A stretch of 63,856 bases of DNA, the filler included, from Octopus bimaculoides (taxonomy: Eukaryota), in NCBI RefSeq assembly GCF_001194135.2. It is 8 parts of 8 records of this genome, joined end to end, with 100 filler letters (N's around TTAATTAATTAA, not from the genome) between each part and the next. Parts side by side here need not be neighbours in the genome. Positions count along the whole stretch, not along the records: positions 1 to 21,334 come from NC_068985.1; 7 more parts are not named here. The stretch is one strand, 5' to 3'. Below the pieces are notes generated by a model. It searched no databases. It saw only the letters and a list, made by a program, of their open reading frames with translations, and was not told where the DNA came from. A program made the translations under genes and the position numbers. This document shows, in pieces, positions 262 to 18,254 of this stretch. Numbering within the stretch: the stretch's first letter is position 1; each line of letters starts with the position of its first letter.

Positions 262-533
262 ATAGCTGTGTGGTAAGAAACTTGTTTCCCAACCACATGG
301 TTCCGGGTTCAGTCCCACTGCGTGGCACCGTGGGAAGGTGTCTTCTACTATACCCTTGGACCGACCAAAGCCTTGTTAGTGGATTAGGTAGACGGAAACT
401 GACAGAAGCCACCTTTTTTAACATTTTTGTCCTTGTTCTTTTGCCACGTCATGTACCCAGTTATGTATCTATATATACATGTGGATGAACGTATATACAT
501 ACATGTACATATATATACATATACTCATATATT

Positions 534-1025: not shown

Positions 1026-1331
1026 ATATGTATACATACATACATACATACATACATACATACATGCATGCATACATACATACATACATAACCTAGAATA
1101 CATGCCCAAAGAAGTCGCACGACTCTACCGCAAAGTATCATCACATCAAAAGACGAGCCTATATAAGCAGAAGATGTATCAGTAGAAAACTCCGAGACGA
1201 TAGTAGCATGATCATCAGAGCAGTTTGTCATGGACCAATAGCTGGGTTACTACCTCCCACTTTGAAGAGCATGCGTTTGCGATCCAGGAACAGGAAATAC
1301 CTGATGCACAAAAAGGATAGAGATGCAGGGA

Positions 1332-1536
1332 TAAGCTACTCAGATATCTGGATGGTTGTACACTTACAGATTTTTATTAATATGCCACATGTTTTTATAA
1401 ATTAGCGCTTGCATCTATTCTTGTAGATTCTCCAGATTTAATTTTTCTTGAGAGGATTTGTCTCTTTTTATAGTATTATTGAATGTGTAGGGGTGGAGAG
1501 AGAGATATAGGAGAGTAAAAGAGGGTGAGGAGTGGG

Positions 1537-3456: not shown

Positions 3457-3626
3457 ATATAATATGCAGTTCAATACTGAGAAAATTCAAGAACTCCAAT
3501 ATCGGCCCACAAAGAGACTAAAATCAGAATACACAAAAGCAGGGAGTAATGCAATCTCAGAGTCAGAGCTGGTGTGCGGCCAGGGAATCCAATCGAGTGA
3601 TGATGCAACATTCCATGTGCATATTA

Positions 3627-4556
3627 TTCGGTTGTCAAGAAAGTTCTTGCGGAATTTTTAATTTTGGTTTTAAATGATGTATTTTCAAATTAATTTACGT
3701 TAAATTACGTTGCCTTTATATATCATTTTAAAGCCCGTTTTTCGCTCTATCTAATCATGTTACTCTTTTTCTTTTTGAATAATTAGGCCATGTTTTCCGG
3801 GACGTTGAATACAACATGGACAAAATGTCAATTCACACAATTTTCTTATTCCAGTTCAAGCTAGACCGAAAAGCTGCTGAAACAGCTTGCAATATCAACA
3901 ATGTGTTTGGCCCAGGAACCACTAATGAACGTACAGCACAATGGTGGTTCAAGAAATTTCGTAGCGGTGATGAGAGTCTTGAAGATGATAAGCGTAGTGG
4001 TTGGCAATCGGATGTTGATAACAATCAACTAAGAGCCTTAGTGGAAGCCAATCCACGCACAACTGTTCGAGAGCTTGCTTCTGAATTAAACGTAACGTAT
4101 ACGATAATTTCCAACCATTTGAAAGAGAGTGGAAAAACAAAAATGGGTGCCGCACAAATTGAACGACAGCCAAACAAAAAAACAAAAAAAAACGCCGTTT
4201 TGAAGTGTTGTCTTCCCTTCTTTTACGCAACAAAAACGACCGGATTATGACTTGCGATGAAAAGTGGATTCTTTACGACAACCGACGATGCTCAGCTCAG
4301 TGGTTGGACGCCGAGAAAGCTCCACGGCACTTCTCGAAGCCAAAGTTGCACCAAAAGAGGTTCATGGTGACTTTGGTGGTCTGCGGCCGGTCTCATCCAT
4401 CACAGCTTTTTGGATCCAGGCGAAACCAGTACGGCGAAGTACTGTCACCAAATGGATGAAATGCATAAGGAATTCCGACAACAGCCAGCATTGGTCAATA
4501 GAAAAGGACCAATTCTTCTCCACGACAACGCTCGGCCAAACGTTGCACAAATGACC
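3627..4556 (+). mobile_element. Mariner (cecropia/Hsmar1-like) transposon, frameshifted and 3'-truncated
   Basis: 5' TIR-like TTCGGTTGTCAAGAAAGTTCTTGCGG after TA; peptides IFLFQFKLDRKAAET, WFKKFRSGDESLED, TCDEKWILYDN, and LHDNARP at about 4519-4540. Confidence 0.92.
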
Positions 4557-4753
4557 CTATAGAGAACTTTCCTTCTCAGTCGTCTGGATTATTGCTCTAC
4601 ACTATGGTCACTGTTTTCTAGTCGCACAAATTGAGGCAATTCAGTGAACGTTACATAAAAGATAAAATTAACAGATGAACTACTGGGAGAAGGTAGAGGA
4701 ATTAAAGCGCTTCATTCTACAGAGAAGGCGTGAAAGACATGCAGTCGTATATA

Positions 4754-5682: not shown

Positions 5683-6125
5683 TGGCTAGGGACAGTCGTG
5701 ATAGTATGGGAAAATCTGTTTCCCTACCACATGGAATTTCTCTACCACATGGATTCAGCGCCACTGCGTGGCAACTTAGTCTCGCCATCTACTATAACCT
5801 CGGGCCAATCACTGCCTTGTGAGTGGATCTGGTGAAAAGAAAGTGTATGTATGTATGTACGTACGTATGTATGTATGTACAAGTATATATATATTTATGT
5901 GTATGTGCGTCTCTCTGTCTGTGTTTGTCCCCTCCACCACCACCACCACCACCTAATCACGCGTGTTAGTGTGTCTACGTCCCCGTTATTTAGCGTTTCG
6001 GCCAAAGAGTCTGATAGAATAAGTACAACACTTAAAAACATGTTCTAGGGTCAATTTATTCGACTTAAATTCCTCATGGTGGCACCTCCACATATCCGTA
6101 GTCTAATGAATGAAACAAATAAAAG
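5683..6125 (+). mobile_element. SINE family A, strongly degenerate copy with internal microsatellite
   Basis: CCACTGCGTGGCA...CTACTATAACCTCGGGCC...GTGAGTGGAT head; TACGTCCCCG...GATAGAATAAGTAC body; TGAAACAAATAAAAG tail. Confidence 0.7.
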
Positions 6126-6140
6126 ATTAAAATAATACAT

Positions 6141-8821: not shown

Positions 8822-8905
8822 GGTAATTTGTTCCGAAAACATTTCCGGACTGAATCCGGAACCGTGTGTTTGGGAAGCAAACTTCTTAAAACATTGACAT
8901 GCCTG
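8822..8905 (-). mobile_element. SINE family A head fragment
   Basis: GGACTGAATCCGGAACCGTGTGTTTGGGAAGCAAACTTCTTA is the revcomp of the family A head. Confidence 0.55.
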
Positions 8906-8918
8906 CAGTAAATTTATG

Positions 8919-9133
8919 CGAAGGTTTGCTGAAAAGTTCCTGGCTTTAAGGGTATAGCAAAGGGCCTGGTGGAGGCTCAATCTTCTGAGCTCTTTTACAG
9001 GGCTTAGAAAAGCTGAAGGACAGCTGCAATAATTCTGTGAATCTGAGAGAGGAATTTGTTGTATAAAATCATAATTAACTAATCTTCCTTTATATTCTTT
9101 TACTCCAAACCAGAAACCTAACAGCACCCCATC
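8919..9133 (+). mobile_element. Mariner-derived MITE (same family as 17386-17601), degenerate
   Basis: CGAAGGTTTGCTGAAAAGTTCCTGGCTTT ... AAACCAGAAACCTAACAGCACCCC; interior encodes transposase C-terminus-like QGLEKLKDSCNNSVNLREEFVV*. Confidence 0.8.
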
Positions 9134-9429
9134 TTATTATAAATGATAGCGCACACAAGCAGAGATACATGCAAACATCTACACTTATACCTACATACAT
9201 TCTTACAGATATAAATATCCAGTACCACCCTGGAAGGTATGTTTGAGGCTCACTTTACAATTCCCTGATCAATATATTTACAGCCTCAAAGTGTAATCTT
9301 TGTTATTAGGTGTCACCTTTGGAAGTAAAATCCGTTGAAGGTTAACTGATCGATGTCAATAGCATCGGTTGGAAGTGCGACACAATAGCAGCGGTTCTCT
9401 AACACCCATTTTGCGGACCAACTTCCTTC

Positions 9430-14334: not shown

Positions 14335-14648
14335 TTTACTAGCATTAGTCATTAGACTGTGGCTGTGCTGAAGAGTTTTTACTCGAATATTTTTTACATG
14401 GTACTTATTCTATCGGTCTTTTTTCCAGAACCGCTAAGTTACAGGAACATAAACGCACCAACACCGATTGACAAGCGGCGCTGGCGGCCCAAAAGCTTCT
14501 TTCAGTTACCGTCTATCAAATCCACTCGCAAGGTTTTGTTTGGCCTGAGGGTACTCTAGATGAAACATGTCCAAAGTGGCACGCAGTGGAACTGAACCCA
14601 GAACCATATGGTAGGGAAGCAAACTTCTTACCACATGGCTACGCTTGA
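14335..14648 (-). mobile_element. SINE family A, near full length, lacking the internal microsatellite
   Basis: Revcomp has head, body and tail in order with only a short GC linker at about 14476-14495. Confidence 0.8.
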
Positions 14649-14884
14649 GCCTATATTTACAATATTGTCATATATACACGCATACATTCGCATATATGTG
14701 TATGCGTGTGTGTGTGTGCGTGCATGTGTGTGTGTGCGTGCATGTGTGTGTGTGCGTGCATGTGTGTGTGTGTGTGAAATTATATGTTTAGAGTATAGGA
14801 GAAACACTAAAAATTTCAACATGTCACATACATATGAAGGCAAATATAACTATAAGTTTTACTAATTGCTGGTAGAGACACCGT

Positions 14885-15929: not shown

Positions 15930-16403
15930 CAACTCTCAGGCATCATTCTGCCGACCGGCGTCTTTGTCTGTAGTTGTACTGTCACGTGGTGCGTTTTTGT
16001 TTTGCAGTACTTCTCTCCTGTTCATCGATATTTGCGATGGCTGAAACGAAGGAACAGCATGCTTCCGTGAATTTCTGTTTTCTGCTGGAAAAAAAAAACG
16101 GCGGCACAAACAATTGTCATGCTTCAAACAGCTTACAAGGACGCTGCCATGAATAAAACACAAGTTTAAAGTGGTTTCGACGCTTTAGGAATGGCCACTT
16201 TTCGCTTGAAGACCAACCACTTTTAGGACGACCGTCGACCTACTGAACGAATGAAAAAATGAAAATTCATGAACTGACCTTTGAGACCGTCACCGAACAA
16301 TTGACGAACTTCTTGATATGACTGGTGTGTCCTGGAGGTCCTGCCAACGAATTTTGAGCGAGGAATTGCGAATGAAAAGCGTTGCAGCAAAATTTGTGCC
16401 CCG
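15930..16403 (+). mobile_element. Mariner transposase 5' fragment (HTH region), truncated by a microsatellite
   Basis: ATG 16037 MAETKEQHASVNFCFLL; WFRRFRNGHFSLEDQ..GRPST; MTGVSWRSCQRILSEELRMKSVAAKFVPR. Confidence 0.8.
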
Positions 16404-16439
<36 letters not shown>

Positions 16440-17114: not shown

Positions 17115-17294
17115 CACGTGGATTGCTATTTCTTTAGAAAGGAATAACAGCCTTAACTGCTTGAGTTCCTTGTAGATCATTATTAAAAATAAAATATGAA
17201 TGAAACGAATTACAATCATATTTTAAAACACTGCAAGTTGAGGGAAAATGGAAGAAAATATATGGGAAAATGTAAGAGAAGGGGAAAAAGAAAA

Positions 17295-17692
17295 GTTAAA
17301 ATGAATAAAGACAAATATTATGAAAACATGACGTTGGTGGAAAATAAAACATATATAGGATTTAAATTACGCTGATTCTAATATACGAAGGGGTGCTGAA
17401 ATGTTTCTGGCTTTAAGAATATCACGAAAGGCTTGGTCGGAGGCTCAACCATCCGAGCTCTTTTACAGGGCTTAGAATAACTGAAAGGGCTGCTGCAATA
17501 AGTGTGTGAATCAGAAGAAAATAAGCTGAATAAAATTATAATTAACAGTTCCTCCTATATTTTCTTTTACCCAAAGCCAGGAACCTTTCAGCACCCCTTC
17601 GTATATTAGAATCAGCGTAATTTAAATCCTATATATGTTTTATTTTCCACCAACGTCATGTTTTCATAATATTTGTCTTTATTCATTTTAAC
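17295..17692. repeat. Perfect 107-bp inverted repeat (17295-17401 / 17586-17692)
   Basis: Base-by-base check: arms are exact reverse complements. Confidence 0.95.
17386..17601 (+). mobile_element. Mariner-derived MITE, about 28-bp TIR, TA TSD
   Basis: TA|CGAAGGGGTGCTGAAATGTTTCTGGCTTT ... AAAGCCAGGAACCTTTCAGCACCCCTTCG|TA; interior aligns with 8919-9133. Confidence 0.9.
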
Positions 17693-18254
17693 AAAAAAAA
17701 AAAAGTGAAAGCGCAAAGAAGAGTTCTTGATGGTGGTGATTGGCGGAAACGAAAGACTGCAAAGATAATTATTTAATATGTACGCGATTTTAAAGCACCC
17801 ATTTCAGTTTTCTTACAAAATATAATTTGTTAAAGAATATTAATACTTGAACCTATGTCGTTAAGGCACCCTAATGACAAAGAGAAGATTAACAGAACTA
17901 GTATCGAAATTCTCGACAAATTCCGTTGAGGTGAGCTGTGTAGTTTACAAAGCGGTAAGTTTATAAATATATAAATATCTAAAATGCTTGATTGACTAAA
18001 GATGCCTGTGGAAAACTAAGATATAAAATATTATTAAGCTTTTACCATAGTGTCTATAAGAAAACTGATTGTTATAATATATATATACATATGCATACAC
18101 AAGAGTATAATTGTGTGTGTGCAGATCTCTCCAGCATAAACACATACATATGTCAACATCTACGTGCGTGATTGAATGTATGTGCAAACATATATGTAGT
18201 CACACATACACAGACACGCGCGCCCAATACCAAATATATATCTATATATAAGTA

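What the first reader, a model, noticed from the sequence alone, without database searches (positions are those of the whole stretch)
17295..17692. Perfect 107-bp inverted repeat that overruns a MITE by 91 bp of flank
Seen: 17295-17401 and 17586-17692 are exact reverse complements. Only 16 bp of each arm is MITE TIR; the inner TIR still has mismatches, the sister copy at 8919 lacks these flanks, and an A-run follows the right arm. Established: quasi-palindrome template switching can copy one arm onto the other. Inference: the MITE hairpin seeded a recent fold-back that rewrote the right flank, creating a new long-TIR unit or hairpin-RNA source. An assembler error at the TIR is the alternative.
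Basis: partly seen in the sequence, partly recalled or inferred. Interest (0 to 1): 0.7.

Follow-up and report, generated by a model that had tools for sequence, protein, structure and literature searches.

The report
Perfect inverted flank copy around octopus MITE
In a stretch of octopus DNA, a small mariner-type mobile element is bracketed by two letter-perfect, mirror-image copies of 89 bases of neighbouring sequence. This most likely records one recent fold-back copying accident seeded by the element's own inverted ends, but a sequencing or assembly artefact, or an insertion into an older palindrome, cannot be excluded without reads or a second genome.

Summary
17295-17401 is the exact reverse complement of 17586-17692, and the repeat runs on to 120 nt at 98%. 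A 216-bp, TA-flanked, mariner-type MITE (17386-17601) sits exactly in the middle. Its sister copy (8919-9134, about 80% identical) has no such flanks. The window is octopus DNA from a gapped short-read scaffold.

With the MITE and one TA removed, the two flanks form a loop-less, perfect 180-bp palindrome. The MITE sits at the central one of its 25 TA sites. A fold-back primed on the MITE's terminal inverted repeats (TIRs) predicts exactly this geometry. The mechanism could be an intrastrand template switch or snap-back synthesis at a break.

Strand composition weakly suggests that the left arm is native and the right arm is the inverted copy.

I could not obtain reads, an orthologous locus or a genome-wide copy number. 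No second copy of the arm was found, but the searches had almost no power.

Rivals that remain:
- a library or assembly fold-back artefact;
- MITE insertion at the centre of a young palindromic element (octopus DNA does hold such elements).

The mechanism is a known kind, and no function is shown. Interest is modest.

The parts
17285..17294 (+). A-rich left border (AAAAAGAAAA) just outside the left arm
   Evidence: Matches the first 10 bases after the right arm at 9/10. It could be a degenerate target-site duplication or simply A-rich context.
17295..17383 (+). Left arm, 89-nt flank part; probably the native sequence
   Evidence: Exact reverse complement of 17604-17692. The 91-nt span 17295-17385 (this part plus the TA) has purine fraction 0.63, and its outer 56 nt 0.70, like the outer flanks at 0.74 and 0.67.
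17384..17385 (.). TA target-site duplication, left
   Evidence: TA is on both sides of the element, as expected for Tc1/mariner.
17386..17601 (+). 216-bp mariner-type MITE. TIRs are 17386-17414 and 17573-17601 (27/29 complementary; the outer 16 nt are perfect).
   Evidence: About 80% identical to 8919-9134. The TIR motif GGTGCTGAAARGTTYCTGG occurs only at the four ends of the two copies. It has no long ORF.
17602..17603 (.). TA target-site duplication, right
17604..17692 (-). Right arm, 89-nt flank part; probably the inverted copy of 17295-17383
   Evidence: Exact reverse complement of the left arm. The 91-nt span 17602-17692 (TA plus this part) has purine fraction 0.37 and lies next to a purine-rich right flank.
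17693..17704 (+). A12 run at the outer junction of the right arm
   Evidence: This junction (17692/17693) most needs read support.
8919..9134 (+). Sister MITE copy without inverted flanks (TG on the left, TA on the right)

Best explanation
This is a real and evolutionarily very recent inverted duplication of flank, primed by the MITE's own terminal inverted repeats.

Proposed steps (inferred):
1. A mariner-type MITE had inserted at a TA in a purine-rich intergenic tract of an octopus genome.
2. Later a 3' end lying in the right TIR folded back and paired with the left TIR. That end was either a nascent strand during replication or a resected end at a break beside the element.
3. The folded end was extended outward, copying TA plus 89 nt of the left flank in reverse complement.
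4. The extended end rejoined the original right flank at what is now the A12 run.

The product is a 398-bp unit with 120-nt arms (107 perfect) and a 158-nt loop.

Shown: the anatomy. Inferred: the order of events, the direction (left = template, right = copy) and the enzymology. No function is implied. If transcribed it would be a long hairpin RNA, and as DNA it could extrude a cruciform.
For: - Perfect 107-nt arms, with the MITE's inner TIR differences retained.
- With the MITE and one TA removed, the flanks form a perfect loop-less 180-bp palindrome. The MITE is at the central one of 25 TA sites. A fold-back from the TIR predicts this with certainty; a random nested insertion predicts it about 1 time in 25.
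- The outer boundaries are abrupt, as for a single copying event.
- The sister copy has ordinary, unrelated flanks.
- Purine fractions are: left flank 0.74, left arm 0.63, right arm 0.37, right flank 0.67. Only the right arm breaks the local strand bias.
- The arm has no relative above shuffled background in the rest of the window or in 97 kb of fetched loci: about 77 kb of octopus chromosome DNA (L001, L002) plus 20 kb of an unidentified ENA contig (L003).
- The mechanism is established elsewhere. Template switching makes perfect hairpins in one event (PMC8794818, PMC10710096) and expands inverted repeats (PMC13100816). Fold-back templated inverted insertions occur at breaks (PMC11724301, PMC2943611, PMC5728401).
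Against: - No ancestral or empty state, and no reads.
- 89-91 nt is long for this class. The expected copied length used for great-ape template switches is about 10 nt (PMC7954356), and yeast fold-back insertions are mostly 5-34 bp.
- No microhomology explains the return junction.
- A-rich sequence on both outer borders (AAAAAGAAAA / A12) is not predicted and resembles a degenerate target-site duplication of a larger inserted unit.
- The direction argument rests on a weak compositional signal. A motif-continuity test across 17295 failed.
Confidence: 0.45

Rival explanations
1. Technical artefact. The right arm does not exist in the animal. A fold-back chimera formed at the MITE's inverted ends during library preparation, or a gap-closing or contig-placement step reused the left-flank contig in reverse on the other side of the MITE. 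The piece was then joined to the true right flank at the A-run.
For: - The piece is a short-read style scaffold with 7 N gaps of 33-526 bp in 21 kb, like the O. bimaculoides chromosome record L001.
- Identity is exactly 100%, and the pivot is an inverted repeat.
- The outer junction falls at a homopolymer.
- The perfect arm (107 nt) is about one short read long.
- Inverted-repeat chimeric reads from sonicated libraries and foldback artefacts in long reads are documented (PMC10908179; PMC12870357).
Against: - The two MITE ends share only 16 perfect nt (18 with TA). From general knowledge, this is shorter than the k-mers normally used for large genomes.
- Their inner differences are preserved, so the ends were not collapsed.
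- Chimeric reads are a minority class and should lose to true reads.
- No other duplicated segment of at least 95% identity exists in the piece, so duplication errors are not systematic here.
- A diverged long inverted repeat (94%) in the same piece shows that real long inverted repeats are assembled.
Confidence: 0.25
2. Nested insertion. The two 89-nt arms are the halves of a young palindromic (foldback, long-TIR) element of about 180 bp that had inserted in an A-run. The mariner-type MITE then landed on the TA at its exact centre, perhaps favoured by a cruciform tip. A variant: an older imperfect palindrome was later homogenised by quasi-palindrome correction.
For: - Octopus DNA holds such elements. 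About 77 kb showed a 122-bp loop-less palindrome with 2 mismatches (L001 11825-11946), a 298-bp foldback with 136-nt arms (L002 11263-11560), and a full-length mariner nested off-centre in an imperfect inverted-repeat element (L001 45723-47285).
- The A-rich borders could be a 9-10 bp target-site duplication at 9/10, or AAAA at 4/4.
- The central site AATA-TA-TATT is the AT-rich palindromic kind of target that Tc1/mariner elements prefer (from general knowledge).
- Those control elements are also single-copy in the sample, so 'no second copy of the arm' carries little weight.
Against: - It needs two recent events and an exactly central hit (1 of 25 TA sites).
- It needs a host that is palindromic through its very centre with 0/182 arm differences, whereas the palindromic elements seen are 82-97%.
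- A mismatch in the putative duplication sits badly with perfect arms.
- The outer ends (GTTAAAATG...) match no superfamily terminus that I recognise.
- The purine bias of the left arm would be a coincidence.
Confidence: 0.2
3. A composite long-TIR element that moves, or was retro-copied, as a 398-bp unit. The fold-back happened elsewhere, and this is a daughter copy, with the A-run as a tail or target duplication.
For: There are A-rich borders and an A12 run directly after the unit.
Against: - No second copy anywhere searched.
- The only recognisable transposase-binding ends are internal.
- No clear duplication follows the A-run.
Confidence: 0.05

Closest known systems
Short-range template-switch mutations, quasi-palindrome correction and inverted-repeat expansion (Ripley model; PMC8794818, PMC10710096, PMC13100816, PMC7954356)
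   Same: One event writes the reverse complement of adjacent sequence, gives perfect pairing, can start from an existing imperfect inverted repeat and lengthens it outward.
   Different: The copied tract here (89-91 nt, 107 with the TIR) is far longer than typical events. The seed is a transposon's TIR pair separated by a 158-nt loop. The ancestral state, which defines such calls, is not available.
Fold-back (snap-back) templated inverted insertions at double-strand breaks: SD-MMEJ and Pol-delta/NHEJ hybrid repair (PMC2943611, PMC5728401, PMC11724301)
   Same: A 3' end pairs with nearby complementary sequence on its own strand and is extended. The result is an inverted duplication joined to the other end without a need for homology. 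A transposase nick or cut at the MITE end would supply the break.
   Different: Reported insertions are mostly 5-34 bp and primed by microhomology of a few nt. Here priming would be by a 16-29 nt TIR and extension by about 90 nt. No break is documented.
Nested DNA-transposon insertion in a foldback or long-TIR MITE
   Same: A Tc1/mariner-type element is bracketed by inverted-repeat sequence that is not its own.
   Different: In the L001 example the arms are imperfect and the insertion is off-centre by about 55 bp. Here the arms are perfect and the insertion is exactly central.
Tc7-type hitch-hiker elements with long TIRs (C. elegans; recalled from memory, not checked here)
   Same: A short non-autonomous unit with TIRs of a hundred or more nt, part of which is a Tc1/mariner end.
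   Different: In Tc7 the transposase-recognised sequence is at the outer tip of the long TIR. Here it is at the inner end, so the outer unit is not an evident substrate.
Inverted-repeat chimeric reads and foldback artefacts of sequencing libraries (PMC10908179, PMC12870357)
   Same: They give the same product on paper: flank, inverted repeat, then the reverse complement of the same flank.
   Different: They are read-level, minority events. Getting one into a consensus assembly needs an extra failure of the true path.

Membership tests
Tc1/mariner-derived MITE (inner element 17386-17601) | TA target-site duplication | tested here: met
   TA at 17384-17385 and 17602-17603. The sister copy has TG on the left and TA on the right.
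Tc1/mariner-derived MITE (inner element 17386-17601) | Terminal inverted repeats resembling a mariner end | tested here: inconclusive
   The 29-nt TIRs are 27/29 complementary. They share AAAGTTC(T/C)TG with the TIR of the octopus mariner (TTAGGTTGTCAAGAAAGTTCTTG) but are only about 60% alike overall by my hand alignment. No autonomous partner with matching ends was found.
Tc1/mariner-derived MITE (inner element 17386-17601) | Short, non-coding, more than one copy at unrelated sites | tested here: met
   216 bp, ORFs of at most 35 aa. Two copies with unrelated flanks are in the window. No further copy in the 97 kb of fetched loci (about 77 kb of it octopus).
Template-switch / fold-back inverted duplication | The new sequence is the exact reverse complement of adjacent sequence, with sharp ends | tested here: met
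   107/107, with no complementarity beyond 17295 or 17692.
Template-switch / fold-back inverted duplication | An ancestral or allelic state lacking the copy | not testable with these tools
   No orthologous locus could be fetched.
Foldback / long-TIR transposon (outer 398-bp or 180-bp unit) | Multiple copies in the genome | tested here: inconclusive
   No second copy was found in the window, the 97 kb of fetched loci, JGI metagenome contigs, viral contigs or predicted proteins. Clear foldback elements used as controls are also single-copy in the sample.
Foldback / long-TIR transposon (outer 398-bp or 180-bp unit) | Target-site duplication flanking the whole unit | tested here: inconclusive
   AAAAAGAAAA versus AAAAAAAAAA matches 9/10, and AAAA matches 4/4. 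This is low-complexity sequence in A-rich flanks.
Assembly or library artefact | Junctions unsupported by reads, and depth on the arms not doubled | not testable with these tools
   No reads are available. Indirect evidence only: a gapped scaffold and no other near-perfect duplication in the piece.
Known structured RNA family (miRNA or other hairpin RNA) | Match to an Rfam covariance model | tested here: not met
   No match at gathering thresholds over the piece, and none at E <= 1 over 17150-17850.

The most novel reading that the evidence does not exclude
TIR-primed fold-back is a recurrent route in cephalopod genomes. By it, ordinary short-TIR MITEs would acquire long perfect arms made of host flank in a single step. 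This would create new long-hairpin loci (substrates for small-RNA or ADAR pathways if transcribed) and seed the palindromic and foldback elements that are frequent in octopus DNA.
Probability: 0.1. Interest if true: 0.6.

Novelty: new member of a known kind. Interest (0 to 1): 0.3.

Why it matters
If real, this is an unusually clean and unusually long natural example of an inverted repeat being extended in one step from a transposon's own ends. It would link two literatures: template-switch or fold-back mutagenesis, and the origin of long-TIR or foldback elements and hairpin-RNA loci. It would also give a simple genome-wide search rule: TIR elements whose flanks are perfect mirror images. If it is an artefact, it flags a class of assembly error at MITEs in short-read invertebrate genomes. 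As it stands it is one locus, with no evidence of function and no proof of reality.

Tried and rejected
- **Arm as a multi-copy element.** I ran BLAST and nhmmer of the 91-nt arm against the masked window and the 97 kb of fetched loci (about 77 kb octopus, 20 kb unidentified). There were no hits above shuffled controls. A 22-mer from the arm gave 0 hits in JGI metagenome contigs and in viral contigs. Both arm reading frames gave no candidate against 5.8 billion proteins. All of these are low-power.
- **MITE core elsewhere.** A 23-mer gave 0 hits in metagenome, viral and prokaryote genome contigs. Its translation gave no protein hit.
- **Independent assembly of the locus.** Exact-product look-ups of six window ORFs, including two that cover the arms and two next to the locus, found nothing on record.
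- **Species and orthologue.** The mariner ORF search identified octopus and gave three loci. None is orthologous, and none holds the MITE or the arm.
- **Continuity of a degenerate motif (GGGAAAATG.AAGA.A) from the left flank into the left arm.** The arm copy does not meet the pattern, so I dropped the argument.
- **'Outer 16 nt of the TIR were converted'.** Rejected. The 17-kb copy's outer TIR equals the consensus of the four ends, so it may simply be intact.
- **Rfam.** No match.
- **Pfam on ten ORFs.** Only the degraded mariner transposase matched, and there is no host gene.
- **Paper on the O. bimaculoides assembly method.** Not held in the library.

Full report
**Observation.** The claimed repeat is present exactly as described. 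17295-17401 is the perfect reverse complement of 17586-17692, 107/107. The repeat finder extends it to 120 nt at 98% (17295-17414 / 17573-17692), with 158 nt between the arms. The two mismatches lie at 17402/17585 and 17406/17581. Further inward complementarity decays, and outward of 17295 and 17692 there is none. It is the only non-low-complexity repeat of at least 95% identity in the 21.3-kb piece. As single-stranded DNA the 421-nt region folds into one long hairpin at -143 kcal/mol, against -35 +/- 4 for shuffles, z = -25.8. Chance is not an issue.

**The inner element.** A second copy lies at 8919-9134. It aligns to 17382-17604 at 79.6%, or 175/219 in a global alignment (alignment). Homology ends at CGAAGG... 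on the left and ...CCTTCG on the right. That sets the element at 17386-17601 (216 bp), flanked by TA on both sides. The sister copy has TG and TA. The ends form 29-nt terminal inverted repeats (27/29 complementary). The motif GGTGCTGAAARGTTYCTGG occurs only at the four ends of the two copies. There is no ORF above 35 aa. This is a Tc1/mariner-type MITE. Its TIR shares AAAGTTC(T/C)TG with the TIR of the mariner family present in the window and in other octopus loci (TTAGGTTGTCAAGAAAGTTCTTG), but it is not the same sequence. The sister copy's flanks are unrelated to these and are not inverted repeats of each other.

**Context.**
- The piece is AT-rich animal DNA crowded with microsatellites.
- It contains seven N gaps of 33-526 bp, so it is a scaffold built from short contigs.
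- A frameshifted, 3'-truncated mariner transposase lies at about 3625-4558, with HTH_48 and Transposase_1 domains.
- Its best protein relatives are SETMAR-like or mariner proteins of Octopus sinensis and O. bimaculoides.
- Three loci were fetched through these hits: O. bimaculoides CM046601.1 (L001), O. sinensis CM016859.1 (L002) and an ENA contig (L003).
- The two octopus loci share the mariner (85-86% nucleotide identity) and several SINE-like repeats (72-88%) with the window. The window is therefore octopus, species undetermined.
- L001 has the same style of variable N gaps.
- No host gene, Pfam domain or Rfam family is found at or near the locus.

**What the geometry says.** Removing the MITE and one TA leaves a perfect, loop-less 180-bp palindrome. 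The MITE occupies the central one of its 25 TA dinucleotides. A fold-back primed by pairing of the two TIRs produces this symmetry automatically. The 3' end in the right TIR pairs with the left TIR and is extended outward. It copies TA and then the left flank in reverse complement. The perfect identity and the abrupt outer boundary fit one copying event.

Strand composition gives a weak direction. On the + strand the purine fraction is 0.74 in the left flank, 0.63 in the left arm (0.70 in its outer 56 nt), 0.37 in the right arm and 0.67 in the right flank. Only the right arm breaks the local bias, which suggests it is the inverted copy. A second argument, continuity of a degenerate motif from the left flank into the left arm, did not hold up. 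The idea that the outer 16 nt of the TIR had been 'corrected' also fails, because these 16 nt equal the family consensus anyway.

**Mechanism and precedents.** Intrastrand or interstrand template switching is known to create perfect hairpins in a single event (PMC8794818; PMC10710096). It is also known to homogenise and expand inverted repeats (PMC13100816). Fold-back synthesis at double-strand breaks gives templated inverted insertions (PMC11724301; PMC2943611 and PMC5728401). The present case would be a long example. The model for great-ape events uses an expected copied length of about 10 nt (PMC7954356), and the yeast fold-back insertions are mostly 5-34 bp. A pre-formed 16-29 nt TIR pairing could plausibly support a longer extension, but that is inference. 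No microhomology explains the return junction at 17692/17693.

**Rival 1: artefact.**
- For: this is a gapped short-read scaffold, identity is exactly 100%, the pivot is an inverted repeat, the outer junction is a homopolymer and the arm is about one read long. Inverted-repeat chimeric reads are documented in sonicated libraries (PMC10908179), and foldback artefacts in long reads (PMC12870357).
- Against: the two MITE ends share only 16-18 perfect nt and their inner differences are kept, so a graph collapse at usual k-mer sizes is unlikely (the k-mer point is general knowledge, not tested). Chimeras are minority reads. The piece shows no other near-perfect duplication.
- I put this at about 0.25.

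**Rival 2: nested insertion into a palindromic element.** This gained weight during the work. In only about 77 kb of other octopus DNA I found three relevant structures:
- a 122-bp loop-less palindrome with two mismatches (L001 11825-11946);
- a 298-bp foldback element with 136-nt arms (L002 11263-11560);
- a full-length mariner sitting inside an imperfect inverted-repeat element (L001 45723-47285).

The window itself has a 149-nt, 94% inverted repeat at 1331-1479 / 2265-2413. The A-rich borders of the 398-bp unit (AAAAAGAAAA on the left, A12 on the right) could be a degenerate target-site duplication.

Against it: this reading needs two recent events and an exactly central hit (1 in 25 if TA sites are used at random). 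It also needs a host with 0 differences in 182 nt, while the observed palindromic elements are 82-97%. I put it at about 0.2. A mobile or retro-copied composite unit gets about 0.05.

**Power of the negative searches.** No second copy of the arm was found in any of these:
- the window and the 97 kb of fetched loci, of which about 77 kb is octopus;
- JGI metagenome contigs;
- viral contigs;
- predicted proteins.

The MITE core was also absent from all public collections scanned. The clear foldback elements used as controls are likewise single-copy in the sample. These negatives therefore say almost nothing about copy number in a genome of gigabases. Exact-product look-ups of six window ORFs, meant to reach an independent assembly of the locus, found nothing.

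**Verdict.** Nothing indicates function. The mariner-type ends are internal, so the larger unit is not an evident transposon. It would be a new example of a known mutational process, notable mainly for its length and for the transposon seed. Reads across the two junctions, the orthologous locus and the genome-wide copy number of the arm would settle it.

Noticed in passing
window 1331-1479 and 2265-2413: A second long inverted repeat: 149-nt arms, 94% complementary, 785 nt apart. The right arm starts directly after the N gap 2144-2264, so the arms may be longer. The spacer holds (GA)n/(GT)n and (CA)n arrays. It may be a long-TIR element.
   Followed up: partly
window 3625-4558: A degraded, 3'-truncated mariner (Mos1/SETMAR-like) copy. 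HTH_48 and Transposase_1 pieces lie in three different frames. It is 85-86% identical in nucleotides to full-length 1273-1293-bp copies in O. sinensis (L002 9812-11084) and O. bimaculoides (L001 45896-47188).
   Followed up: yes
window about 16040-16410: Translated fragments (MAETKEQHASVNFCFLLEKK..., ...DRHRTIDELLDMTGVSWRSCQRILSEELRMKSVAAKFVPRF) look by eye like the N-terminal part of a second, different mariner-type transposase. The piece is cut off by a (TA)n array. Pfam gave no hit.
   Followed up: partly
window 262-410, 5750-6135, 14387-14666 and 8849-8888: Copies of SINE-like repeats shared at 72-88% identity with several places in the O. bimaculoides and O. sinensis loci. One fragment lies just upstream of the sister MITE.
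   Followed up: partly
L001 11825-11946 (O. bimaculoides CM046601.1): A 122-bp palindrome with no loop and only two mismatches, next to a (TA)n array. It is single-copy in the sampled DNA and its origin is unknown.
   Followed up: partly
L001 45723-45840 and 47191-47285: The full-length mariner at 45896-47188 sits inside an imperfect inverted-repeat element, about 55 bp off its centre. This is a natural example of a mariner nested in a hairpin-forming element.
   Followed up: partly
L002 11263-11560 (O. sinensis CM016859.1): A 298-bp foldback-type element with 136-nt arms at 82% and a 26-nt loop, from a gap-free (apparently long-read) assembly.
   Followed up: no
window, whole piece: Very high microsatellite density (61 tandem-repeat rows in 21 kb). 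Most of the seven N gaps abut TA, AC or TAT arrays, so the assembly broke at simple repeats.
   Followed up: no
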